A stretch of 62,617 nt of DNA, filler included, from Dugesia japonica (GCA_001938525.1; 6 parts of 6 records of this genome joined end to end with filler, not necessarily neighbours in it), one strand, 5' to 3'. Positions 47,442 to 62,617 are shown, counted from the first letter of the whole stretch. Notes: generated from the letters alone by a model not told the origin. Made by a program: numbers and translations.

Positions 47442-47691
47442 CCTTTGTCCAGAACAATTTATGGAGTGTACGAAACTCTCTTGCAGGGGCTAACGATGAA
47501 AATATAGCCGGTGGGGACTCTTGATTATCATGATGGTGAATTTGACTCTGAAAATATATTTGGTGTACGGGTTGTCTTTTCTCTGTTGATTTTCTGGTGG
47601 TGTTGAAATTTATGCTCCATTAAGAATGATTGTGTTTCTATAATAATTAATTAGCCTTCATTGATCAATGACTGATTTTGTCTTTTTCTAG

Positions 47692-48059
47692 TGCACTCAT
47701 CGTTAAATCGATCGGCCGCTCCAACCGAAAAACTTCGCGAGGACAGCAAAGAGAGGGAAATGACGTGGGACCTCTACCGCTTGGCTAAGCGTAGATGGGA
47801 GGCCGAAGTGGCTACAGCAAGCGCCAAAGTTAAGCGTTACCGGGCCAAATGCCGTAGCATCCGGGAGGAAATGGGCCTTGTTCAGGCGCAAGAACGAGTA
47901 TGGAAGGCCCAAGTCGAGTCCTTTTCTGAACTCATCCGGTCCGGCCATGACCGAGAAAATAAACTGGTTAATGACATCTTAGCTTTAAAAGCAAAGTCAT
48001 ACCTTGAGCCCCTTATGATTGATAAGGGTACTCAAACAAAGAACTCCGCCCCACCTTGA
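47692..48059 (+). CDS. Module 1: phase-1 terminal exon, coiled-coil protein with a C-terminal KGTQT motif
   Basis: tctttttctag acceptor; intact GC-rich frame; AATAAA at 48070. Confidence 0.6.
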
Positions 48060-48182
48060 ATTTTGATATAATAAAATTATTTTTCTGTGTATGTCTCTTG
48101 TATTGCTAAAATTTTGCCAGGTCGTATTTGGTGATGATAAGATATTTGGATTACACTTTTCATATATCGTTTGTAATTTCAG

Positions 48183-48565
48183 TGGTCCGAATTCAATTCC
48201 CTAATAGCCTAAGGCNNNNNNNNNNNNNNNNNCGCCGCCTCCTGGTAGAGCGTCATTTGAAGCGCAAAGCGGAACAGGCCTTGTTGAAACACCTGGATCA
48301 ACGAGATAGGTTAATTAAAAAGCTGTATCTCGTTGTCAAAAAACCGTCCGATTTAGCGGCCCAAACTAGGGCGTTAGAGACGGAGAACAAACTCCTGTTG
48401 CAACGCAAGGTCAATTTCCTCAAGCAGTACATCGCTGACTTGTCCCGCCAACTAGGCGATCCTAACATCTCTCAATGGGATGAAGATGACGACATTGCGG
48501 CTTTTAACTTTGTCGCCACTTCCCCAGACCAATGGTTAGATCCTGCCGCTTTGGATCTCATCTAA
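48183..48565 (+). CDS. Module 2: phase-1 terminal exon, basic/zipper-like coiled coil with an acidic-hydrophobic tail
   Basis: aatttcag acceptor; open frame across a short N run; paralogue at 49003; AATAAA at 48578. Confidence 0.65.
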
Positions 48566-48699
48566 ATGTTATTTGATAATAAATGCCTAATTAGTAGAAA
48601 TGCCTTAATTCGTTACTTAATAATAAATGTTTAATTAATAGAAATGATTTAAATATTACCGGGAAAATATAGAACCCGAACAAAAGGCTTATTGGTGAG

Positions 48700-48835
48700 C
48701 ACCTTCCATCAAGGGTAAGGTCAACCGCAATAATCCGAAAACCTATCATAGGGACGGTAGGGTTAAATTCTTGAAAGGGCTCCCCTGAGGACTGTTTTCC
48801 CCAGTCACTTTTTCTAACTCAGGTGNAGCCCCAAC
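48700..48835. other. Structured motif copy 1 (multi-stem)
   Basis: Stems gggct/agccc, cctga/tcagg, gactg/cagtc and cctatc/ggtagg; covaries with copy 2. Confidence 0.6.
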
Positions 48836-49002
48836 TAAAGCACCCAAACTAAACCGATATCAAATGGCTAGACTTTTTCTATATCTGTAAATAAATGATT
48901 AGTTAGTAAATCCTTACCTTTGTGCGTCTTATTTAGTTAGGGGAGTTTCGTTCTATATAAAATAAATTAATTATTTCTTTTCATTAATACTTCCTTATCA
49001 AG

Positions 49003-49385
49003 TGCCACGGATCACATTTCCGAACAGCTTAAGACGGTTTCACCGGATAATGCGTCGCCTACTCATCGAAAGACAGTTAAAACGTAAAACCGACCGAGCG
49101 TTATTAAAACACCTAGCCCAAAGGGACCAAATGATAAAGAAACTAGATTTGATAGTAAAAAAGTAAAACGATTAAGCCACGCAAACTAAGGCTCTAGAGA
49201 ATCAAACCCAACTGTTATTGCAAAGGAAAATNNNNNNNNNNNNNNNNNNNNNNGGGGATCTTTCTTGCCAGATTGGTAATCCCTCTTGGTTGCAGTAGAA
49301 CGATGATGATGATGTAGCCACCTTTAACCTTTTAACGATGGATCTAGGCCAGTGGCTAGACTCTAGTGCATTAGATCTCCTATAG
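49003..49385 (+). pseudogene. Module 3: decayed paralogue of module 2
   Basis: AG|TG phase 1; PRITFPNSLR...RRLLIERQLKRK...LLKHL...QWLDSSALDLL with one frameshift and internal stops; AATAAA at 49397. Confidence 0.85.
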
Positions 49386-49489
49386 TTTTCATATGAAATA
49401 AATTTTTTCGTGTTCAAATTATTGTAGTATCAATAAAGTAATGACGATAGAGAAAATCGCGAACCCAAATTTAAAGGTATATGGGCGCG

Positions 49490-49632
49490 TACCTCTCATT
49501 AACCTAGAGGTCAACCACCACATGCCGAATGCCTAACTTAGGGACGTTAGGTTAAATTCTTGAAGGGGTCTCCTGAAGGCTGTTTTTCCCCAGCCACGTT
49601 TTTTTTGACCGAACTCAGGTAAAACCCCAACA
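49490..49632. other. Structured motif copy 2, ending in the LTR-like terminus GGTAAAACCCCAACA
   Basis: Stems ggggt/acccc, cctga/tcagg, ggctg/cagcc, cctaac/gttagg and acctct/agaggt. Confidence 0.6.
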
Positions 49633-49694
49633 CAAAAAGACTTTTTCTATCTAAATCTTTAAACGTGATTTCTTGTTTAATGTCAATTTCTAAG

Positions 49695-49969
49695 GATGCT
49701 ACCTCACTGGTAGACCTAAAAAATGGTCCTCCTTGCAAGAGAAATTGCAGACATAAATCACAAAGCTACAACAAAGAAACACCAAACTCCAGAAACAGAA
49801 CGTCACATTGAAGAAACAAGACCTCGTCTTGTCATAGTCAAGCCATATAATGGCCAACATCATAAAGTCATATGCGGAACGAGTATCAGCACTAATGTCA
49901 ACTGTGCGTACCTTAGTCTAGTTCTCTTTAATCAAAGAAACGATCAAACCGAAGACAAGAATAAAATAA
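49695..49969 (+). pseudogene. Module 4: decayed phase-1 coiled-coil exon
   Basis: aatttctaag acceptor; frame CYLTGRPKKWSSLQEKLQT*ITKLQQRNTKLQKQNVTLKKQ... shows heptad leucines and 3 internal stops; AATAAA at 49960. Confidence 0.45.
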
Positions 49970-51074
49970 CAAAATATCGACGAACCATGAAAAATTTGTT
50001 TTATGTAAATAAGTCTTTAGTTATAAAGACATATTTATAAGCTTTTCAATCTTGAATGAATGAAAAATGGATAACCAGAGACAGTAAAAGGAAAAACAAC
50101 TGTAGCTCAAAAACTGAATTATGCAAGGACAGGACATTAGTCCGCATGGACAAAGGGTAGATGGAACAATGCACAAGTTCTGCCGGCGTTAGGATATCTA
50201 CTCCTAGAAGATTTCATGATAGAAACAGTGACAAAGAAGGAAAATCAAGAGAATGGTTCACGGATAAATAATAACATCATAAACTTCGAAGTCCAACAAA
50301 TGTTAAATTATCTTCTTTATCTTTTTAATATGTTACAAGATATTTTCATGTAAATTTTGAATGTAACTAATAACTGTTAAATAAATAAAAAATTAAAATA
50401 TATACGACCTTCTTATGAAATAAGGATTGTCAGTGGCCTTTAACAAAAAGCTTCCCAAACCTTGGCATGAACTAATTTATAGTTGACAGCAATCAAAATT
50501 GTAGATTAATTTTTTAATCTATTGTTACGGAAATTTAAGTAAACGAAACGCCATAATTTATCTCTAAAATATTATTTTAAGTTATAGTCAAACAGGCAAT
50601 CGAGTTGATTAAATAACAAAAATAAAATTCATTGAAATTATAAATTTTAAAAACATTAAATTACTTAATTTAAATGGCATAGCGTCAATTTTGTTTTAAT
50701 ATTTTAATTCAACCTTGTCAAATCAATTATTAATTTGTCATTTATTAGTTTTCAATTATCAACTTAGAAAGTTGTAAAAGAAATTTTCTATAAAAAATAT
50801 ATCGATATTGTTAATATTCAGCGAAATACTTATCTAAGTTATTTGGTATTATTAACATTGATTTGTGCCTAAAGTTATTTACAATAAATAAATTCAAAGC
50901 CATATCCTTAAGATAAGCAAATTCAATAGTTTTTTTAAAATTTAAACATATTTGAAAACAAATACAAATTACGATTAAACTAAGTTCAACCCTACAAAAT
51001 TTATTCAATAAAAATTAAGAATTTTTGATAAAATAATTTTATTAAACCTAAAAATAATTTCTGGTTATAAATCA

Positions 51075-51492
51075 TCAAATCATAACATCTCCATTCTACA
51101 AAACATAAAATCTATTAAAATGAAATTAATTTATTAACTTGAACTGCTTTAACTTCATCAGGTGACAAATATTTTCTTCGGAATCGTTTATCAAGATAAA
51201 TATCACTAACCGCTTGATCTGAAGGTATTTTGCATTTAACTTTGAAAGCAGATGATATTCTTTTAATTTCCGAATTTTCTGTACATTGTGTGTTGAAGTT
51301 CACAACTACATTTTTATTAAATAATTTGTAGTAAAATAGTACCTTCATTTTTCCGAATTGGGAATTTAATCATTGGCTTATGACTATTAACCTATATTAT
51401 AATTTTATAAGAAAATTATTTGCACTTATAGACATCACTTTTGTAATAAATCGAAAACTTAAAATAATATTCTTTGAAAAATTACGAAACAT
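51075..51492 (-). CDS. KGD4: KGD4/MRPS36 (alpha-ketoglutarate dehydrogenase subunit 4), ~96 aa; exons 51492-51439, 51391-51343, 51305-51139, 51095-51075
   Basis: Presequence-like MFRNFSKNIILSFRFITK; HKPMIKFP (cf. HTPLIRFP); KRFRRKYLSPDEVKAVQNG (cf. QKYRRKLVSQEEMEFIQRGG); three phase-consistent GT-AG introns of 47, 37 and 43 bp. Confidence 0.85.
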
Positions 51493-51644
51493 TTCAAAAT
51501 AAATAATTAAAATGAATTACTAAAACAAAGAAATAACAATTTAAAATAAATCAACTTTTATGCTATCTTTCGGTAATTATTTTAACTTAATTGAATTAAT
51601 TAAAATATTGATAAGATAAGATATTAGTAATTTTGTATTGACTT

Positions 51645-52100
51645 GAACCACCTAAGTGTTTGAAACAACTTCTTGGATTTATAGGGCTTACAAATTATTA
51701 CAGAAAATTTAATAAAAATTATTCAAAACACTCGAGGATATTAGAAAGTTTATGTGGAAACCATAAAAATAAATTAATTTGGTCAGATCAATGTAAACAA
51801 AGTTTTGAAGCTTTAAAGCGAGAATTAATGAAGGCTCCTATTCTTATTTATCCAGATTTATCCAAAGAATTCATACTAGATACAGCTGCCACCTTTGAAA
51901 CAATTGGTAGAGTATTATCACAGTTAGATGAACAACGAAATAAATGCGTTATATCTTATGAAATAAAAGCAATTAGTAAGCATGAATTAAGTTATTGTAA
52001 AACCAGGAAAGAGCTTCTAGCAATATATTATTTTACGAAACATTATAAACACTATTTATACGGGAAAAGATTTAAGCTTCGAAATGATCACACGCCATAA
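51645..52100 (+). mobile_element. Ty3/gypsy pol fragment (RT thumb to RNase H)
   Basis: LGFIGLTNYYRKF, LIYPDLSKEFILDT, RKELLAI and YLYGKRFKLRNDH motifs. Confidence 0.92.
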
Positions 52101-52180
52101 CTTTTATTTTAAAATTACAATTATTGTGAGAATAATTGTTGGATTTAACAATTGATCGCATTTGAGATTTCATGAAAATC

Positions 52181-52312
52181 AGAAAAAGCTTCGATCAAAA
52201 TAAAATTTATTTGTAAAAAGGTTCAAATTTTCGAAAATAGTCTTCTTCAGGAACCATGTCGAAAATTTGAACCTTTTTACAAATAAATTTTATTTTGATC
52301 GAAGCTTTTTCT
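52181..52312. repeat. Perfect 54-bp-arm palindrome, same family as 46519-46747
   Basis: Arms 52181-52234 / 52259-52312 are exact reverse complements around a 24-nt spacer. Confidence 0.95.
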
Positions 52313-52865
52313 TATTTTACAAAACTTTTATGTTTAATACAAAATAACCGATTACTACACAATTCGAAAAATGGATCAATCATCTAAGTAGTTTGGATAT
52401 GATTTTGGAATACAAAAACCTGAATGTCATTTAAATTCTGACGCAATGTCAGTAAATAGATAGTAGAGCACGGGCACAATTTACACTCCCCTCTACCCTG
52501 GGAGACTCGAAAACTGCATACTATTGTGCTAGTATTTTTAAGTTAGATTTTTTTCCTAAGATTTTTGGGATCAAAATGGTTTTGATCAGAATATTTTTTT
52601 ATCTGGATCAGATTTTTTTGATTCTGTGAGTGTGTGTGTATTTTCCATTTTTAAAATTTGTGTATGTTTGGGAGGTTGTGTGGGTTAATTTAAAGTAAGT
52701 CAAATTGAGGTGGTGTGTGTGGGAGTGAAATTGGACGTGAGGGAGGTGTGCAGATCTTGGAAATAATTTGTTTGTGGGTTTTATGATATAGGTGTTAGGA
52801 CTAAAATTCTTTCTATACATTGTCTAAAGGACTTATGTGGTAGAATTGATGGTTCGCCATAGAAG

Positions 52866-54483
52866 TGTTGGGGTTTTACCCTAGATGGATTTATTCCTTA
52901 TATGATTAAATCTAGGGGGGTCGAACTTTATGTGAAATTAAGTCTAGGGTAATTGACCCTGTAAAACCCCGTGATGAATTTGAATCTGGTGTCCCCCCAA
53001 AAAATATCCAGATCTTTGGGATGAAGCCGTTGACTCGTAGCTCGAGTAAAGACTCGCACCCCTTTGGTTCGGATTCATATTTCGTAGTGCTCGCTAAATT
53101 TTGATAACTACTTAGTTGATTTTAGTTACTGGTGTCAGTTTAATAAAGGAATAAAATAAAACCATATTAAATGAAAGGAAAATCCGGTTGTGAAAAGTTA
53201 TATTATTATTTATTTCACTCATTACATTAGAATTACATAAATAAAAATAAGCTAACATAGACTGCAAACTCGATCCGGAGCAAGCACATCGGGGTGAGTT
53301 CATTTGCTACTTCTTCTACCCATTTTTGTAGATCCTTCCGAGTCAGAAATCGTTGCAATCCAAACTTTATATGGTTAAATATTTACCGTGGATATTCTCG
53401 ATTTTCCGGTAATTTTCCAATAATAACGATTGAATAATATTGCTTTTTTCTTCGAGATTGAGTGGGAATTTTCACTTAAGAATTATTTTAATGGTTATCG
53501 TTGTCTAAAATTCGAACGGTATTTATACTGTTTCTCTTTACACCCTCATTCAATTCATTGGTGGATATAAATTCTTGGCGTTTTTATTGGCCAGATGGTC
53601 ACATGCTTTCTTTTCATTGGCGGTTATTTGTGGACTTCAAAACTATTGGTCAACCTTCAGACCCTTATAACTTTTTTCCCTTCCTTGCCATGATTTTCTA
53701 TGTTTAATTTTTAAATTTGCCGAATTTTTCTCGACCAGAATTTTTTAGATTGATAATTTTGGCACCACTAGAAGTCCTAATTTTCTTAGTTTTTGGTAGA
53801 AAATTTAATTTTAGATTTAAAATAAATCGTTTTAATTCTTATGATTTATTTTATTTAAATAAAATAAATTATTTATTTTATTTTCGTTGTGCATCTTAAT
53901 TAAGTGCTCATTTCTTTGGTCTTTCTGATTTATTTAATTTAGTTTCATTGTTTTTCTTCTATTAATTAATTAATTTAGTTAATTTTTTCTTTCTTCCAGT
54001 ATAATTCAATGTGATTTTCTTTATTTTGTCTAATGAATTGATGGTTAATCATTAATTTTTTGTCGTCCTTGTACAGCTTCTATTACTTTTTCCTCTTTTG
54101 TTTACTTATTTCTTGCTGTGATTTCGGCTATTTCGTTGGTTTTGGTTACCAATCTAGATTTTTCTTTTCATTATTTCTTTCTTTTCAATTAATGAATCAG
54201 TTCCTTGGCCATCGTTTATTATTTTCGTGGTTCGGATTACCGCTTCTGTACTTTGTTGGCTTTTTTATTTCCTCGTTATCTTCTGCTGTAGTTCTAGTTC
54301 TTTCATCCTTCACACGAGTTTTGGCCTTCTAGTTCCATTATGGCTTTCGTCATTCTTCTCTCTGATTAGATTATGCCCTTCTTGGGTCCGAATTCTTCAT
54401 TTTCTTTTCTTATGTAAATTTCTTTGAATTTCATGTTTACTTACACCATTTTATTTGCTTTAATCCGGTATTTCACCCCAACA
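52866..54483 (-). mobile_element. Solo LTR (1618 bp)
   Basis: TGTTGGGGT...ACCCCAACA termini; flanks gaag/gaat (4-bp TSD with one mismatch); interrupts otherwise colinear homology with 32550-32600; internal CCAAT/TATA promoter. Confidence 0.75.
53520..53649 (-). promoter_or_regulatory. LTR promoter: four CCAAT boxes plus TATAAATA
   Basis: Plus-strand ATTGG at 53557, 53586, 53616 and 53645; TATTTATA at 53520-53527. Confidence 0.7.
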
Positions 54484-55319
54484 GAATTTTGGTAGCGAAC
54501 GGGCACATGATTATAAGTTCTCGTGGATTGGCTTTTGGGATAGTGTAGATTTGTTGGTGGTTGTTGGATTTTGTGTTTGGTGGNNNNNNNNNNNNNNNNN
54601 NNNNNNNNNNNNNNNNNNNNNNNNNNNNNNNNNNNNNNNNNNNNNNNNNNNNNNNNNNNNTTGATTGATTGATTTGTAAGTAGTATAAAGATATTAAAAC
54701 ATTTTTTGGAGGGGAAAGGCATAATGTGTAAAGGTAATTAATTATTGGATTTTATAAGATTTAATTGAAATTTTTCTCTTAGGTGGTTGTGGCGTAATAT
54801 TTTTTTGAAAAGTTAATTTTAAATAAAATGATTCATTTTGCTTAAAATAATGTATTTTAATAAAAATACTGAATTAATTGAAAATATTGGTTTATGTAAA
54901 AATATGTGTATTTTATTGAGTAGACTTCAAATTTATGTATGGGATGTGGTAGGCCTTATATTTTTTAGTAGATTGTGCTTGAATTTTTTTCCCCGGTTGT
55001 AACTCAATTTATTTTTTTAAGGTTTATAGGGGTAATCAGAGTTTTGATCGGATCATTTTTTTAGTTCGGGATCATAAATTTTTGATCTGGAGATGTGGGT
55101 GAGGCGATTTTCTTTTTTTAAAATTTGTGTGTGTTTAGAAAGTGAAGGTGGTTAATTCGAAGTAGGTTAGGTGAAATTGGTGTGCGTTTATGCAAATGTG
55201 CAAGTGCACTTGATTGTACTGTGCAGTTATTGATTTGCATTTTTAATGGTTTTATGATATTGGTGTGTAAGGACTAAAATTCTGTCTATACATTGTCTAA
55301 AGAACTTATGTGGTAAGAT

Positions 55320-56002
55320 ATATTGGAATTATCATTCTGAAAAAATGAATTCAATTATGAAATCAAAATTTATGACCAATGGATTAACTGGACATAATTT
55401 GTCAATTTCTTATTTTTGTTTATCATTTCTTATATCCTATAAGTGCTGATGCCAAATTTTTGATTTTCTATTGGTGCATATTTTTGGAGCACATTGTGAT
55501 TCTTGTTTCTTTATTTCACGTTTCTTTTCTGGCTTCTGATTGGTCCATTCTTCAAAACCTTTTATAGACCATCCTGATAATGGTAAGGTATTCTTGTTGA
55601 AAATTTACTATGCCCTGTAACATTTCTTCTTCAAATTTCCTTACTAGGGTCTTTTGTGATCTTCCAGAGTGAAGATATTCTATAAAAACTGATTTTCTCT
55701 TAATTTTAATTCTTTTCTGCAATAAATTAATTAATTTTTCATGATAAATTTTTTTATTATATTTTATTAATATTTTCTAATTTCAGGTAATAAATTATAA
55801 TTTCCTCAACTTTAATTATTCGCGACTGGCTTATTATAATATTCTTCTTTCATAATTTCTCCCGGATCCTTTTCTAAATATTGATCTGTAAATTATTGAT
55901 AAATTGGTGATTGTTGTTAATCTTTCAAGTTCCGTTTCTTCTTGGCACTAATTCCGGACCCCTGGAGATATTATCCTTATTATCGGATGTTTCACCCCAA
56001 CA
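55320..56002 (-). mobile_element. 5' fragment of a related LTR
   Basis: Begins TGTTGGGGTGAAA on the minus strand, like the solo-LTR end at 54483; the other boundary is unclear. Confidence 0.55.
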
Positions 56003-56637
56003 TATTTATTAAAATTCATAGGCACGTGATGCATCCCAATTGCATACATGTTGCATTTATTATAATAAGAAAAATTGATTATTTTACTACTTAAAAACAT
56101 TTTTTAATTCATTATTTATAAAAAACCTTATTAATTTACTAATTATAAAAATAATAAATAAAAGAAAACAATTATCCAATAAAATATTTTTAATACAATA
56201 TTTAAAAACTAAATGAAAAACTAAATAAAAAAAATAAATAAAAACGAAATAAAAGACTAAATAATACATTTATTTTTTTATCAATAGTAACAAAAAAATT
56301 TATTGTATTGATTCATTTCAGCCAAAGGCTTTTCCATAGCGACCATCAGATTGAACTTTGCACACCCGATACAGTCAGGTGCGAAAAAACCAGCTGTCAT
56401 ATATTGATTTATAATCACGTCCAGAAGCATTTATTTTCGTTCTTCTTCAATCCTTCCACGTTTTTACAAAATATCTGTGAGCATTCCTAAATTAAATTTA
56501 TTAAAAAATTTAAAAATTAATAAATATTCAACCTGTTTTCATAAAATCTTCTTGAAATTCCTTCATTGTGGATTTTCTCTTAGTCATTTTAATTATATTT
56601 TACAAGAAAATTAATAATGAAATGCTTAATAAAAAAC

Positions 56638-57250
56638 AGTAGGTACATAGTAGCGCACTGGATCAACCTCCCCAGTTGACGTGATCGGATTATTACATAA
56701 GTGATCCAGTATTTTTCTAATGTAAATAGGCATTGGCACACATAATGTAACTAATTTCGTCGCGTGATTATAATATAAGGGATCCAGTATTTTTTATGTG
56801 TATTTAGTCGACGAACAAAATTTATGAGTGCAAGATTAATTTCATCGTCGGAAAATTTAGGCTTTTTTAAGCGGTAGTATTTTTTGCTGTGAATTTAGTT
56901 GGGAATTTATTCGTTGAGGTGAAATGAAGTCAATTTTTGACTGGTTTAGGTGAAATTGGTCTAATTTTTCCTCGGGATTGATAATTTTTGGGTGATTCGG
57001 TCAATTATTTTCATGGTTTAAGCAATATTGGTTTAATTTTCCCTGTAGATTGGTAAGTTTGTGTAATTTCTGAGTGAATCGGTCAATTATATACTCGGTT
57101 TAGGCAATATTGGTGAAATTTTTCCTCGGGATTGGTAATTTTTGGGTGATTGGGTCAAATTTTTACTAGGTTTTCGATATTTTGGGTTGAATTTTGACGG
57201 AAATTCATGAAAAAAGTCAAATTTGTTTATATTTTCAAGTTTTTTTAAAT
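56638..57250 (+). mobile_element. Divergent Polinton-like end with subterminal tandem repeats
   Basis: agtaggtacatagtagcgcac resembles agtagtgggatagtggcgcac; ~70-80-bp repeats (ttcctcgggattg...ggtcaa) at 56940-57170. Confidence 0.45.
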
Positions 57251-58074
57251 TATTTTAAACCTTTGTGGTAAATTAGTGAAATTAGGTCATTTTTTGTTAA
57301 AATTTTTAAATCAAATTTTTATGAGAATCCAGAAAACATTTGAAATTTTAAAAATCTTTGAAAAAATTTTTTTTGTCGAAATTTTTACATCAATCGATGT
57401 GTTGGGCTGAAACAGTTTTTCGTAAAATAGAAGGAAATAAATTAAATAGTAATAAGAAAATGAATAAAAAAAATAAATAAATAATGAGAAATAAAAGAAA
57501 TATTGATCTATGAAATAATAATGAAACGATTATTAAATAATAATAACTGAAGTTAAAAAGTGTAAGAAATATCAATCAAAATCTAGAGTAAAACAATAAA
57601 AAGAAAATAAAGTTGTAAAAAGCTATCGAGATAACGAAGAATTGATTAAATATTAAAATATACAATAATTGAAGATAATCAATAATTAGATGGCTAAGGT
57701 AAAATATGCTCANNNNNNNNNNNNNNNNNNNNNNNNNNNNNNNNNNNNNNNNNNNNNNGAATATCTATTATTATTTATAATTTGTATAAATGTGTTGAAA
57801 GTATCTATGTATTAAAAATAAAATTATATTGATGAGAGAAAAAGAAAGATTAAAACAAATAATTATATTAAAATATTTAGATATTTTAGAGAAAAATTAT
57901 AGGGGGAAAACAGATTAAATCATCATGATCATTATAAATAATAAAATAATAGATTATGAGTCAGGTTTAAGCACAAGAATTGTCTTATTATTATAATTTT
58001 ATAAAAATATAAACATGTGAAATTATTATTATTATCGATAAATATAATTAAAATTATTATTATTCAATAAATAC

Positions 58075-58420
58075 TATTATTTATAATGAACCCGGAGAAA
58101 ATTATACGTAGAAGAAGATCTGATGATTTTGTGTAAGAATTCAGTATTTATATTTGCATATTTGTATGTGATTATGTGGTTATCTTTATTTATAAAATTT
58201 TTACAAGCTTTAGAAAATTATTATTTTTTAAGAAAAATATTATTATTTATAATGAATAAGAAAGAATTAAGACAGGAAATTTATATGTAGACGAAGGTCT
58301 GATGATTTTATGTAAGAATTTAGGATTGATATCTTTATATTTGCATGTGATTGTGGAGTTATCGCTATTTCTAAAACACTTACAAGTTTCAGAAAATTAT
58401 TATTTTTTAAGAAAAATATT
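58075..58420 (+). repeat. ~170-bp diverged tandem duplication
   Basis: tattatttataatgaa...tctgatgatttt...agaaaattattattttttaagaaaaatat occurs twice. Confidence 0.85.
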
Positions 58421-60079
58421 AATTTTTTAACCCTCTCACTATGAGTAAAAAATATAGAACATCTGTGCGCACATAATCCGCTACAGAATTAACAAAAAAT
58501 AAAAAATAATCACATTCATATTTGGNCATCTATGTGGAAGCTACGGGTGAGCAGCGTACGATTTCTTGCATTAGCAGAAATCTGAAGTGGACGCAAAACG
58601 TATCTGTCAAAATTTAACGATACAGTGAGGTATAAAAGGAAATCAAAATCAGTGGAAAATCAGTCTTAAAAATTCAATTTTTCTTTAGCTCTTTTTGGTC
58701 GACTAAACCAAACTTTTAAGTAGCATCTACTATTATCAGAGGAAAAGATAAAAATATCAACGGAAATCAAAGAAGTAAATCTTTTAATTTATTTATAATA
58801 TTATTATATCAAAATAATAAAACGGAAAACTGAGGTGATGGTCGTCATAACTAGCCTTTTTGGTATTGACGATCATCACAGCTTAGATATCCAATGCACC
58901 ANNNNNNNNNNNNNNNNNNNNNNNNNNNNNCAAGTAGAATATTGTTAAGATGATTATGATAAAGTTGGACTCCGTATTGTGAGATGATGTTAATGAATAT
59001 AGGGAGATTTGACTATGATGATGATGATAATAGAGAGTAACGATGATAAACGTTTACGGTTAAAGACGCTGATGTTTAAGATAATGAAGAGATGAATATG
59101 GGTTCAAGTTTTGTATAATGAGGCAATGAATAAAATAAAGTAAATACGGTAAAGAGATGAGGGTTAATGATACTTTAAGCATTGATGTATGGNGGTTGAA
59201 CTTTCTGTTACTGAAATACAAGTTATTACATTGAGCTTAGTGTATTCAATGAGTATTAGGAACTATGAAGTTAACGTGAATTTACTTGAAAATATTAATT
59301 TCCGTTTATAAAATTATGCTGTTACGTTTTGATTTCATAGATTTATATAAAATTTTTTTGGTTAATGAGAAATAATTTTTTATCTATTGAATTAAACTAG
59401 AATAATTCATTTGAAACAGTTATATATTTCCTGAAATATAATTTAAACTTTTGACTATTTTATTGATATCGTTAAAGTAATAATTAATAACACAAAATGG
59501 TCTAAAATAATTGACGCGATTTAAAATCCCTAAATCATTAATAATTAGTAAGTCGGGATGTGTCAGTTCCTGAGAGCAATAAGGGACGAAGCTCTCACCG
59601 AGGACTCTCACCTCTTTACTCGTTTATATAATACAAATTAAAGATATTCGAAATTATTGTCAGTTGTAAATAGTTAAATTATAAAATTGTTTAGAAATGT
59701 CCAGAAAGTTTAAAAAGATGGAAGCAAAAAAGTCATTGAAGATTGAACCAACACATCGAGCGAGCAATGCCCATACTCATGGCTCGTCTAGAACCTCTAG
59801 TAGAAGTAGAAGTCATTGAAGATACGCTAGTATAACAATCATCAGTGTAACTATGACCATGAAAAGTTATAATATATTTTGCTTCGTAATTGATTTTCTT
59901 CACAACTGTTTTAGCATGATGATTAACAATTGAATATATAGATCATTTATAATTAATTTTAATAATATCTCAGATCACATTTAAAATGAAGCACCTCAAA
60001 TAGTGGCATTTTGTGGGTAATTCAAATTTGAATATTTTTTTTGGGGTTGTGGGTAATTTAAAGTTATTTTTGAAGTCTA

Positions 60080-60190
60080 AATATATATGCTTAGGACAGT
60101 CTTGATATTTTACATGGTATGGGGCAGTCTTGATATTTTGCATGGAGCAGTCTAAATACATATGCTCAAAGGTATTTAATTAAAGGTATT
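60080..60190 (+). repeat. Isolated patch of Polinton-like subterminal repeats
   Basis: The gggcagtcttgatatttt motif shared with 33355-33640. Confidence 0.7.
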
Positions 60191-60647
60191 TAAGGAATAA
60201 GACATTAATTAATTTTTTATAAGTTGATTAGTTGAAATAAATTATAAATAATTTTTTCATGCATTGTTTCAGTAACAGTCTTGTTCCCTTCCATACCATT
60301 ACATTACCTCCGATATGCATAGTCCGACGGAGCGAATCTATCAAGGTCTTAAGGATCCAATTCGAGTCCACTCATAATTGAACTTATCGATTAGCTTGCG
60401 TAGTTTTAACTAGGCTAAGCTCGATTACAGTATATGCATCTCCGATAGCAGTGCTTCCATCCGTTCACATTCGGACATAATTGAACACCACTACCATTGT
60501 TTTAAAAACAATCAGTCATCATCGTCAATAGTTGACTAGACTCAGATCCGCAAAATTGTCAGGAATTTCAAGTCAACTGTTACTTATTCAATACATAACA
60601 TTTTTATATTATTTAGCACATATTAAACATCTTTAACACATTTTTGG

Positions 60648-60795
60648 ACCATATTAATGGATCCTTTAAATATCTTAGACCATATTACTATGGAACCTTT
60701 AAACATAATTCACCATATTACTATGGAACCTTTAAACATAATTCACCATATTAATGGAACTTTTAATCATAATAGATCATATAATAATGGAAATT
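60648..60795 (+). repeat. 31-33-bp minisatellite, about 5 copies
   Basis: accatattactatggaacctttaaacataattc units. Confidence 0.85.
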
Positions 60796-60959
60796 TTTAT
60801 TTGATTTACCTAAATTTACATTAAATTAACATATAAAGGAAAAAACTCACCATTTTTAAATTCTCCATTTTTAATTCTCCATTTTTAATTTTTAATGCAA
60901 TTATGTAAATATGAAATTAAACAATCAATAAATATATTGATTGCTTAATTTTATATTAC

Positions 60960-61851
60960 TGTTAGATCTTGTGGGGAGAAATAACAATTAATTATTTAAT
61001 CTGACTCCAATTAAAATACGAAAATTAAATGCGCGTAAGGTATTATATAAATATGATAATAATAATAAATAACTAAAAAAACACTTTATATTTGATAAAC
61101 TTTATTATATTAAACAAAATTAACAAAAATTACAATTAACAAATAAAACCCAATTGATTTTTGGGATTTATCAATTTACTGCTCTATTTAAATTTTATAG
61201 AAGGATAACCGGTTCTACAATACCGTCCTAAAAAGTTCTGAATGGTTGGCCTAATATTCCTCACCACACGTGTTAGATCAAGATGTGTATTTTAATTTAT
61301 TTTATAACAGATCACAGATAATATATCAGTGTTTGAACCACTGTATTATTATATGACAAAAACCAAATATTTTAAAAGAAACAAATTGTAATCTAAACAG
61401 ATTTATATTTGTTCTACAAATACAAGAATTATTATTACCTTAACTGCTAATAATTAGCGCCTTAAAAGTTTTAATGCTATTTATCTGAACTGCTAATTTA
61501 GCTAAAATTTATGTCCCTAACAACTGATTTTCAATCAGTATTTATACTAAATTTAATAAGTATGTGTGTTAATACACATAAGAAAAAATTAGGACAATAT
61601 TCATTATTACTAAATATANNNNNNNNNNNNNNNNNNNNNNNNNNNNNNNNNNATTGATTAATTTCTTATTTCTAAATTTAGTAATTTATAAAAATTCTTT
61701 TTATTAAATTGAATGACCTTGAAATTTTTAATATATTGAAAAGCTTAAACAAACAGAAATTTTATGAATCAAATTAATAAATTAAATAAAATTTTATAAA
61801 TAAATTTATAAACTAGATAAACCAATGTAAGTCTAACTTACAACCCTAACA
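60960..61851 (-). mobile_element. Probable 3' LTR of a minus-strand LTR element
   Basis: TGTTAG...CTAACA inverted termini; purine-rich GAGGGGATGATA (61852-61863, minus) immediately precedes it; an alternative end exists at 61271. Confidence 0.6.
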
Positions 61852-62212
61852 TATCATCCCCTCAAAAATATGTTTTTGTCCCAAAAACTAAAATAATTAA
61901 GATAAAATAAAATTCATAACTATTAACAAAATTTGATCACTAAAATAAAATGTAAATGATTGTATATACAGCACAAGTATATAATATTGTCTAATAGCTA
62001 GATAATGGCGAACGGTAGTAGCTGTATACAGCTATAGTTCCCATATTGGACTGAATTGGAATAACTTTGGATTAGGTTGGCAACAATGACGAACGGGAGT
62101 AGCTAGAAACGCTAGAGTTCTCATTGTGCTTGGATTGCTGATAGAGTAGAGCGGTAGTAGCTAGAAACGCTATGGCTCTCCCTATTTGAATTTTCATTTT
62201 GGGGCGGCTTAG

Positions 62213-62617
62213 TCAGCTGTTAATCTCGTATACATTCTCGTGCACGAAACTCAATCGTAAATTCTTTAACTTATACTGTGCCCATAACCATACTGCGATT
62301 ACGCCCATGAAGCCTATTGCTGCCATTAGCAATGCTATTATCGTTTGAATGCGCTTTTGCATTTTGTCATTTTCTTTGAGATTTAAAGGTGTCACAATGG
62401 AACAATTGCACGATGTTGAGGCCATTTTTAAAGCTGCTTTTTCTATATCAATATTCGTTTGACACGATTCGATTTTGCTCCAGAGTTTTGCGTTTAATTT
62501 CCTGGAGATTGGTTTTTTACTAGTTGAATCAACTTTAACATTGCTTGGTTGTATTTCTTCTGAGAATACCAGATATGAGGCTGTTGATTCCGTTAGCCAT
62601 CGATAACATCTAATTTT
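62213..62617 (-). CDS. Env-like or accessory membrane protein C-terminus (frame open to the window edge)
   Basis: 134 open codons with Cys residues and a late hydrophobic helix IQTIIALLMAAIGFMGVIAVWLWA followed by basic residues; lies just upstream of the PPT/LTR. Confidence 0.55.
   Translation of the reverse strand, partial: KIRCYRWLTESTASYLVFSEEIQPSNVKVDSTSKKPISRKLNAKLWSKIESCQTNIDIEKAALKMASTSCNCSIVTPLNLKENDKMQKRIQTIIALLMAAIGFMGVIAVWLWAQYKLKNLRLSFVHENVYEINS

What the first reader, a model, noticed from the sequence alone, without database searches (positions are those of the whole stretch)
48700..49632. Duplicated multi-stem motif with compensatory substitutions after modules 2 and 3
Seen: the two copies are diverged but keep their pairing. 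The outer stem is gggct/agccc (48777/48827) versus ggggt/acccc (49565/49624); the inner hairpin is gactg/cagtc versus ggctg/cagcc; cctga/tcagg is invariant. Upstream hairpins are cctatc-atagggac-ggtagg versus cctaac-ttagggac-gttagg, and acctt/aaggt versus acctct/agaggt. Double changes in two separate stems suggest selection on an RNA or ssDNA fold such as a packaging, processing or self-cleaving element. It lacks a complete hammerhead or twister core.
Basis: partly seen in the sequence, partly recalled or inferred. Interest (0 to 1): 0.8.

Follow-up and report, generated by a model that had tools for sequence, protein, structure and literature searches.

The report
Conserved multi-helix RNA element, three copies
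A roughly 175-220-base G+C-rich non-coding element occurs three times in this A+T-rich animal-type DNA and keeps the same set of RNA helices through many paired substitutions; it matches no described RNA family and its function is still unknown.

Summary
The two copies (c1 48663-48883, c2 49452-49651) are islands of 77% identity and 46% G+C. They lie in spacers of 21-25% G+C that no longer align. Each follows one of two old paralogous terminal-type exons (M2, M3). The synonymous sites of those exons are saturated, so the element has been kept by selection. Three hold true double substitutions and the 'outer stem' is a register slip. An enclosing helix (P0) adds two more double changes. I found a third, diverged, inverted, solo copy (c3, 52859-53083, minus strand). 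A covariance model built from c2 alone recovers c3 (E about 0.002). On the three-copy alignment 96% of pair cells are paired and 19 of 35 pairs changed on both sides; slid controls give 27-46% and 1-3. G-U pairs favour the sense strand, so the fold is probably RNA. No Rfam family, tRNA, reading frame, transposon ends or outside relative was found, and there is no evidence for self-cleavage. Best reading at 0.4 confidence: a cis-acting structured RNA domain at the 3' ends of sense transcripts. The main rivals are a mobile small-RNA family and an independent ncRNA gene family.

The parts
48663..48883 (+). Element copy c1. The core is 48663-48835, followed by a 34-nt extra stretch and then the shared 3' block at 48870-48883. 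Helices: P0 48686-94/48728-36; A 48701-05/48717-21; B 48742-47/48756-61; closing (outer) 48777-81/48827-31; middle 48784-88/48819-23; inner 48790-94/48802-06. The single N at 48826 lies in an internal loop.
49452..49651 (+). Element copy c2. Helices: P0 49476-84/49518-26; A 49491-96/49506-11; B 49532-37/49546-51; outer 49565-69/49624-28; middle 49572-76/49615-19; inner 49578-82/49591-95. The shared 3' block is at 49638-49651.
52859..53083 (-). Element copy c3 (sense strand is the minus strand). It is diverged and solo, with an insertion of about 65 nt in the 3' domain. Helices: P0 about 53061-53056/53024-53019; A 53047-43/53037-33; B 53013-08/52989-84; a 10-bp closing helix 52970-61/52879-70; inner hairpin 52960-56/52950-46; an extra hairpin 52915-10/52886-81. 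Its 16-nt 3' end is identical to that of c2.
48183..48565 (+). Exon M2 ('module 2'). It has a phase-1 acceptor, an open frame and a stop at 48563-65, and it contains the N run 48216-48232. It encodes a coiled-coil segment with an acidic tail. No relatives were found.
49003..49385 (+). Exon M3 ('module 3'), a paralogue of M2 and colinear with it over 126 codons. It has three in-frame stops and no frameshift, and it contains the N run 49232-49253.
47692..48027 (+). Exon M1 ('module 1'), a coiled-coil ORF. Its inferred phase-1 acceptor and donor join it in frame to M2 or to M3.
   Evidence: and a reading of the splice-site letters (inference)
48566..48662 (+). A+T-rich spacer between the M2 stop and c1 (21% G+C). 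It holds a 44-nt tandem duplication, each unit with a poly(A)-signal hexamer. It is not alignable with the spacer before c2 (49386-49451).

Best explanation
The element is a structured RNA domain of about 175-220 nt that folds on the sense strand.

Its anatomy:
- a 5' domain, in which helix P0 encloses an internal loop and hairpin A;
- a small hairpin B, whose loop ends in a conserved G-rich word;
- a conserved single-stranded linker;
- a 3' domain, made of a long closing helix, a hairpin right after its 5' strand, and a long U-rich 3' linker;
- a short conserved tail.

Selection acts on the helices as pairs and on a few unpaired words as letters. That is the pattern expected if a protein or another RNA reads the loops on a fixed scaffold.

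c1 and c2 were inherited together with the tandem duplication of a terminal-type exon. They sit in the sense orientation 70-98 nt after the stop codons, just past the first poly(A)-signal hexamers.

Most likely role: the domain acts in cis on the transcript that carries it. It would lie either in the 3' UTR or in the stretch just past the cleavage site. The role would be 3'-end formation or termination, stability, localisation, or the use of the two alternative last exons.

Shown: the fold is conserved, the element is under constraint, the sense strand is preferred, and the element belongs to no described family. Inferred: that it is transcribed, that it acts in cis, and what the role is.
For: 1. 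Constraint.
- M2 and M3 differ at 68 of 99 third codon positions, against 33 and 16 at first and second positions. Amino-acid identity is 62% and dN is 0.26.
- The introns and spacers of the two units no longer align (z 0.8, -0.6, -1.5). The element aligns at z 17.8 with K = 0.27.
- G+C is 0.46 in both copies, against 0.21-0.25 in the flanks.

2. Fold, two copies. Consensus-energy z is -4.5, the conservation index is 0.66 against 0.39, and coding controls are flat. The substitution-redistribution null gives p about 0.003-0.018.

3. Fold, three copies.
- A model built from c2 alone scores c1 at 107.8 bits and c3 at 17.7 bits, with noise at 10 bits or less.
- The same alignment without structure scores 71 and 11.2 bits.
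- 96% of cells are paired, 19 of 35 pairs changed on both sides, and no shuffle of 500 reaches this. Slid partners give 27-46% paired and 1-3 such pairs.
- A test of c3 anchored only on sequence-conserved words gives chance values of 0.22, 0.056, 0.49, 0.004 and 0.11 for the five helices.

4. Compensation occurs within each copy. The stems therefore pair locally, not with a shared distant partner.

5. Strand. There are 6 G-U cells and 1 A-C cell. c1 and c2 have the orientation of the gene.

6. Homology fades gradually at both edges, as expected for a segmental duplication.
Against: - c3 is not preceded by an M-type exon, and no gene could be shown upstream of it. There is only a 41-residue ORF ending 150 nt before it. 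A solo inverted copy fits an independent unit at least as well as a cis element.
- There is no expression evidence. The poly(A) hexamers lie before the element, so it may not be in the mature mRNA.
- M3 carries three in-frame stops, yet c2 is as well kept as c1.
- Only three copies are known, and the three-copy alignment was fitted to the model, which inflates pair counts.
- Single-sequence stability is unremarkable for c1 and c2 (z -1.2 to -1.8).
Confidence: 0.4

Rival explanations
1. The element is a mobile or formerly mobile small-RNA family, meaning a retroposed or SINE-like unit. Its source copies are selected for an RNA fold that their copying machinery recognises. c1, c2 and c3 would be three insertions or their descendants.
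For: - There are three copies within 5.5 kb, one inverted and solo.
- The neighbourhood is rich in repeats: a gypsy-type fragment, a 146-nt foldback and other dispersed repeats.
- Fold-keeping differences between copies are what subfamilies of structured retroposons show (established knowledge).
Against: - There is no tRNA, 5S or 7SL-like head.
- All three copies carry runs of five or more T on the sense strand, which would stop RNA polymerase III (read).
- There are no shared A-rich or simple-repeat tails, no target-site duplication, and terminal inverted repeats of only 6-8 nt at shifting positions.
- The edges of homology are gradual.
- c1 and c2 sit at equivalent places and in the same orientation behind paralogous exons.
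- Nearly all c1/c2 substitutions in stems are compensated, so there is little sign of neutral decay after insertion.
Confidence: 0.25
2. The element is a small family of independent non-coding RNA genes, each copy its own transcription unit. The position behind M2 and M3 would be only a by-product of the duplication.
For: - A closing helix, conserved loops and a multi-domain fold are present.
- G+C-rich islands in A+T-rich DNA are a classical signature of RNA genes (established knowledge).
- The solo copy c3 keeps the fold and has the best single-sequence z-score, -2.5.
Against: - The three copies share no upstream element.
- Internal T runs argue against polymerase III.
- No described family matches.
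- The copies differ by insertions of 34 and about 65 nt, which is unusual for a functional RNA of fixed size.
Confidence: 0.15
3. The element is a splicing-control structure for the choice between the two alternative last exons M2 and M3. This would resemble the competing or masking RNA pairings described for arthropod 3' variable regions. In c1 and c2 a 3'-splice-site-like tract and a 5'-splice-site-like word are buried in the helices of the 3' domain.
For: - M2 and M3 are tandem paralogues with the same phase-1 acceptor behind the same donor.
- An eight-pyrimidine tract followed by AG occurs 8 times on the + strand of the 15-kb piece. One is the M1 acceptor and two lie in c1 and c2.
- CAGGTR occurs 5 times, two of them in c1 and c2, 18-25 nt after the tract.
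- There is a literature precedent for masked splice sites and for similar intronic elements at 3' variable regions (PMC6191721), and for their origin by duplication (PMC6071210).
Against: - c3 keeps the fold but neither splice-site-like word.
- No docking site complementary to the conserved unpaired words stands out from noise in 47442-50400.
- Compensation is within each copy, the opposite of what selectors competing for one docking site would show.
- The two 'mini-exons' differ in length by 7 nt.
- M3 has three stops.
Confidence: 0.1
4. The element is a self-cleaving ribozyme of a new class.
For: It has a compact multi-helix fold with conserved unpaired words and occurs in several copies. 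No known class explains it.
Against: - No ribozyme model matches.
- Few unpaired words survive in all three copies.
- Large insertions are tolerated inside the 3' domain.
- Nothing in the sequence marks a cleavage site.
Confidence: 0.05
5. The element is a DNA-level feature, meaning protein-binding sites including the 11-bp palindrome of hairpin B, and the helices are incidental.
For: - The palindrome is kept in c1 and c2 by a symmetric change.
- The longest invariant word between c1 and c2 (15 nt) is unpaired in the model.
Against: - c3 replaces the palindrome by a different helix at the same place.
- Across the copies it is the pairs, not the letters, that are kept.
- The excess of G-U over A-C is not expected for duplex DNA.
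Confidence: 0.05

Closest known systems
Competing or masking RNA pairings at arthropod 3' variable regions and mutually exclusive exon clusters (Drosophila PGRP-LC, CG42235, Pip; Dscam1, 14-3-3xi): PMC6191721, PMC6071210
   Same: The setting is the same: tandemly duplicated alternative exons, each accompanied by a conserved non-coding element similar to its sisters. These elements originate by duplication of an exon together with its flanking structure. In c1 and c2, splice-site-like words are buried in helices.
   Different: The known systems are short complementary boxes that pair over long distances with one shared docking site. Here each copy is a self-contained domain of about 175 nt with six local helices. 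Compensation is within the copy, no docking site was found, and a third copy lies away from any such exon.
Structured RNA modules carried by retroposons (SINE bodies, LINE or SINE 3' tails)
   Same: These are also multi-copy, a few hundred nucleotides long, dispersed in both orientations, and keep their fold between diverged copies.
   Different: This element has no polymerase III head, no tail, no target-site duplication and no sharp ends. Two of the three copies are at homologous positions of an old segmental duplication.
Cis-acting structured elements of eukaryotic 3' UTRs (for example SECIS elements and mRNA localisation or translational-control elements)
   Same: The position just after the coding end, the sense orientation, and helices kept by covariation with conserved loop words are all shared.
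   Different: No Rfam model of such an element matches. The element here is larger and multi-domain. Whether it lies inside the mature mRNA is not known.

Membership tests
Self-cleaving ribozymes (hammerhead, twister, twister-sister, pistol, hatchet, HDV-like, hairpin, Varkud) | A match to the family's covariance model, meaning the catalytic core together with the helix topology | tested here: not met
   Rfam 15 scans of the whole piece at E up to 1, and of each copy alone at E up to 10, on both strands, gave no ribozyme family.
Self-cleaving ribozymes | Site-specific cleavage of the transcript | not testable with these tools
   This needs RNA end data.
Docking-site/selector competing RNA structures | A tandem array of paralogous alternative exons with equivalent splice phase | tested here: met
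   M2 and M3 are colinear over 126 codons, have the same phase-1 acceptor and follow the M1 donor. Their actual use as alternatives is inferred.
Docking-site/selector competing RNA structures | One docking site complementary to all selector copies | tested here: inconclusive
   The best duplexes in 47442-50400 are 10-13 bp with G-U pairs and no better than other hits. The gene's upstream part is cut off at 47442.
Docking-site/selector competing RNA structures | Selector arms co-vary with the docking site, not with a partner inside the same copy | tested here: not met
   The double changes pair within each copy.
SINE (polymerase III retroposon) | A tRNA-, 5S- or 7SL-derived head with an internal promoter and no internal terminator | tested here: not met
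   ARAGORN found no tRNA and there is no Rfam hit. Runs of five or more T lie inside all copies on the sense strand.
SINE or MITE | Sharp ends with target-site duplication, and terminal inverted repeats for a MITE | tested here: not met
   Only 6-8-nt A+U-rich inverted words at non-equivalent positions are present. There are no flanking direct repeats and the homology fades at the edges.
SINE or MITE | High copy number across the genome | not testable with these tools
   Only the 15-kb piece is available. Pattern scans of public metagenome and viral contigs gave chance hits only.
snoRNA (C/D or H/ACA) | A match to a family model, meaning the boxes in register with the terminal stem or hairpins | tested here: not met
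   No hit fell on c1 or c2. There is one sub-threshold C/D hit (20.2 bits against a gathering score of 45, E 0.77) antisense to the 3' part of c3.
Protein-coding exon | A frame open in all copies, with indels in multiples of three | tested here: not met
   Indels of 1, 1, 1, 4 and 3 nt separate c1 from c2, and no frame is open in both.

The most novel reading that the evidence does not exclude
The element founds a new class of structured RNA in arthropod-type genomes. It would be a self-contained six-helix domain placed at the 3' ends of unrelated genes and read by a dedicated protein or RNA partner, or possibly catalytic. It would have been kept for longer than it takes synonymous sites to saturate.
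Probability: 0.2. Interest if true: 0.7.

Novelty: new variant of a known kind. Interest (0 to 1): 0.45.

Why it matters
If the fold holds up in more genomes, this is an undescribed structured RNA family in an animal genome. Such families have mostly been found in bacteria, and in animals few large cis-acting 3' elements are known. Its position behind two alternative last exons gives a concrete case for asking how duplicated exons carry their RNA control elements with them. If it proves to be a retroposon module instead, it is ordinary. It would still be a clean example of a fold preserved between subfamilies.

Tried and rejected
- Known RNA families. Four Rfam scans and a tRNA scan found nothing.
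- Protein relatives of the modules. The word search on M2 and on M1 was blank. Pfam gave only sub-threshold coiled-coil hits. The full search of 1.84 billion representatives with M2 gave two spurious repeat or coiled-coil hits. The gene is therefore an orphan and gave no route to orthologous loci.
- Outside copies of the element. Two metagenome pattern scans gave nothing and then one chance hit, seen on two near-identical G+C-rich bacterial contigs. Two viral scans gave two chance hits and nothing.
- Docking-site search: noise only.
- Mini-exon or recursive-splice-site reading of the 3' domain. It looked attractive for c1 and c2 but c3 does not keep the words.
- A third M-type exon next to c3: none found by tblastn or by a protein profile.
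- A shared promoter-like element upstream: none found.
- Coding potential around c3: nothing found.
- MAFFT misaligns the 3' domain by one column. I therefore used a pairwise alignment in a script and then a model-based alignment.
- I did not use exact-protein look-ups of the window's own ORFs. They would return other copies of this genome and show the masked letters.

Full report
**Setting**

The piece 47442-62617 is A+T-rich eukaryotic DNA with 16-31% G+C over most of its length. It has several N runs, dispersed repeats, and one fragment of a gypsy-type pol gene at 51660-52100 (RT_RNaseH_2, E 6e-27). The best named relatives of that fragment are spider retrotransposon proteins at 44-50% identity. 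The host therefore looks like an arthropod-type animal, but I cannot name it. I do not take it for human sequence.

**The 'modules'**

The region 47442-49700 is richer in G+C, at 35-45% in 500-nt windows. It contains three ORF-like blocks. Reading the junctions gives a simple exon model, which is an inference from the letters.
- A partial exon ends at 47511.
- Exon M1 is 47692-48027.
- Exon M2 is 48183-48565 and ends in a stop codon.
- All junctions are in phase 1, with pyrimidine-rich acceptors and GT donors.
- M3 (49003-49385) has the same acceptor phase and is a paralogue of M2, colinear with it over 126 codons.
- M3 has three in-frame stops and no frameshift.

M1 and M2 have no detectable relatives. 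The Pfam scan, two word searches and the full search of 1.84 billion representatives returned only coiled-coil or repeat noise.

**Gaps (tested first, as asked)**

The run 49232-49253 lies inside M3, not in the motif. On either side M3 is colinear and in frame with M2. Where M3 has 2 nt plus 22 N, M2 has 24 nt, which is eight codons. tblastn spans the run in one match of 110 residues over 330 nt. The run 48216-48232 in M2 fits the same way against M3, at 18 nt or six codons. Both runs therefore look like masks of true length. The single N at 48826 falls in an internal loop of c1. I filled none of them and did not look them up elsewhere.

**Age of the duplication and constraint on the element**

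M2 and M3 differ at 33, 16 and 68 of 99 first, second and third codon positions. They are 62% identical in protein, with dN 0.26. Synonymous sites are thus saturated, and both exons were under protein-level selection for most of their separate history. The intron before each exon and the spacers around the element no longer align (z 0.8, -0.6, -1.5 against shuffles). The element aligns at z 17.8, with 22% differences (K 0.27), and has 46% G+C against 21-25% in its flanks. It is the only part of the unit that blastn still finds at the nucleotide level. The element is therefore kept by selection or, less simply, arrived later.

**The stems, two copies**

- True double substitutions occur in hairpin A (U-A to C-G), in hairpin B (U-G to A-U) and in the inner hairpin (A-U to G-C).
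- In hairpin B a third, matching change sits in the loop and keeps an 11-nt palindrome.
- The 'outer stem' change is a register slip between a G run and a C run.
- A further helix, P0, encloses hairpin A and adds two double changes, one mismatch-to-wobble change and one break.

The tests gave these results.
- Enumerating all helices of at least 5 bp kept in both copies finds three with compensation, against 0.41 expected. 34 of 3000 column shuffles reach this.
- RNAalifold gives z -4.5 on the + strand and -4.9 on the - strand. The conservation index is 0.66/0.74 against about 0.4 in shuffles.
- The two coding parts of the same duplication give z +0.9 to -1.3 and an index of 0.10-0.34.
- Redistributing the observed substitutions on either copy gives p about 0.003-0.018 for energy and index. 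It gives only 0.05-0.08 for the number of compensatory pairs.
- Single-sequence z-scores are modest, at -1.8 and -1.2.

Taken alone, two copies make a suggestive but not decisive case.

**A third copy**

A profile of the two copies found a weak match on the minus strand. Reading it shows a full-length diverged copy, c3, whose sense strand runs from 53083 down to 52859. It shares the 5' words and several internal words. Its 3' end is identical to that of c2 over 16 nt, and it has an insertion of about 65 nt in the 3' domain. Detection is reciprocal.

A covariance model built from c2 alone with the six helices was run without filters over both strands of the piece. It scores c1 at 107.8 bits and c3 at 17.7 bits (E 0.002), and nothing else scores above 10 bits. 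The same model without structure gives 71 and 11.2 bits.

In c3 hairpins A and B, P0 and the inner hairpin are formed by different letters at the equivalent places. The closing helix becomes a continuous 10-bp helix, because its 5' strand has changed to match a 3' strand identical to that of c2.

On the three-copy alignment 96% of the 100 pair cells are standard pairs, and 19 of 35 pairs have changes on both sides. No shuffle of 500 reaches this. Sliding the partners by 1-3 columns gives 27-46% paired and 1-3 such pairs. That alignment is fitted to the model, which flatters it.

As a check I anchored c3 only on words conserved in sequence. I then asked how often shuffled inter-anchor segments supply the partner arm. 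The chance values are 0.22 (A), 0.056 (B), 0.49 (P0), 0.004 (middle helix) and 0.11 (inner hairpin), which is jointly of the order of 1e-5 to 1e-6. c3 alone folds with z -2.5. The conserved fold is therefore real.

**Strand and molecule**

Among the pair cells, 90 are Watson-Crick, 6 are G-U, 1 is A-C and 3 are unpaired. This favours the sense strand (+ for c1 and c2, - for c3) and RNA over duplex DNA. The margin is modest, and the alignment was optimised for that strand.

**What it is not**

- It matches no Rfam family on any copy, even at E up to 10, and no tRNA.
- It is not coding, because the indels are not multiples of three and no frame is open in both c1 and c2.
- Transposon hallmarks are absent. 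There is no polymerase III head and no shared tail.
- All copies carry T runs of five or more on the sense strand.
- There is no target-site duplication, only 6-8-nt inverted A+U-rich words at shifting positions, and the edges of homology are gradual.
- No shared upstream element was found.
- Pattern scans of public metagenome and viral contigs returned chance hits only. Eukaryotic genomes cannot be searched by DNA with these tools, so the family's true copy number is unknown.

**Ideas tested along the way**

In c1 and c2 the 3' domain buries a strong 3'-splice-site-like tract and, 18-25 nt later, a 5'-splice-site-like word. Both kinds of word are rare in the piece. With M2 and M3 as alternative last exons, this recalls the masking and competing pairings described for arthropod 3' variable regions (PMC6191721). 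It also recalls their origin by duplication (PMC6071210). Four points weigh against this reading.
- c3 keeps the fold without these words.
- No docking site stands out.
- Compensation is within each copy.
- c3 has no M-type exon next to it.

I keep this as a minor rival.

**Verdict**

This is a real, selected, multi-helix RNA element of unknown class with at least three copies. My best reading, at 0.4, is a cis-acting structured domain at the 3' end of sense transcripts. It would have been inherited with the exon duplication and read through its conserved loops. A mobile small-RNA family (0.25) and an independent ncRNA gene family (0.15) are serious rivals because of the solo inverted copy. 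Self-cleavage (0.05) has no support. The decisive evidence is descriptive: a genome-wide and cross-species census with a covariation test, transcript and end mapping, and chemical probing.

While reasoning, and not in any tool call, note or script, I wrote out from memory several short consensus motifs and two longer fragments. The motifs were the ribozyme core, promoter boxes, an Sm-type site and splice-site and branch-site consensus words. The longer fragments were a ribosomal 5S RNA and the ribozyme of a human satellite virus. I stopped when I noticed. None of these letters was sent to a tool, and nothing in this report rests on them. All statements about known families rest on the Rfam and ARAGORN scans cited above.

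The joined M1+M2 or M1+M3 products were not searched as one string. The exons were searched separately by reference.

Noticed in passing
window 51660-52100 (+): This is a lone fragment of a gypsy-type pol gene. It is a 146-residue ORF covering the RNase H-like domain behind reverse transcriptase. The best named relatives are spider retrotransposon proteins at 44-50% identity. No other part of the element was recognised in the piece. I did not analyse its breaks and built no joined or repaired version.
   Followed up: partly
window 52175-52318: This is a 146-nt near-perfect palindrome with arms 90% complementary. It is also the site of a sub-threshold mir-186 hit (24.6 bits against a gathering score of 70). 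It is probably a foldback repeat.
   Followed up: no
window 52579-52842 and 55041-55315; 58050-58427; 56929-57195: These are other dispersed and tandem repeats of the piece, at 69-80% identity. They are unrelated to the element.
   Followed up: no
window 48568-48652: This is a 44-nt tandem duplication (83% identity) in the spacer between the M2 stop and c1. Each unit carries a poly(A)-signal hexamer.
   Followed up: no
window about 53395-53425 (-): This is a short stretch resembling the 5' edge of c1 and c2. It falls below the thresholds of nhmmer and blastn-short, so it is either a fourth 5' fragment of the family or chance.
   Followed up: partly
upstream of c2 (about 49423-49433, +) and of c3 (about 53101-53112, -): An 11-12-nt word is shared at the same distance (28-29 nt) before the start of the element. 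It is not significant by shuffles and is absent from c1.
   Followed up: partly
window 52846-52929 (+): This is a sub-threshold match to a C/D-box snoRNA model (snoU43, 20.2 bits against a gathering score of 45, E 0.77), antisense to the 3' part of c3. It is probably chance.
   Followed up: no
window 48233-48565 versus 49053-49385: M2 uses G+C-rich third codon positions and M3 uses A+T-rich ones. The two differ at 68 of 99 third positions while keeping 62% protein identity. M3 has three in-frame stops.
   Followed up: partly
window 48216-48232 and 49232-49253: Both N runs have exactly the length that keeps the exon colinear and in frame with its paralogue. They therefore look like masks of true length rather than gaps of estimated size.
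   Followed up: yes
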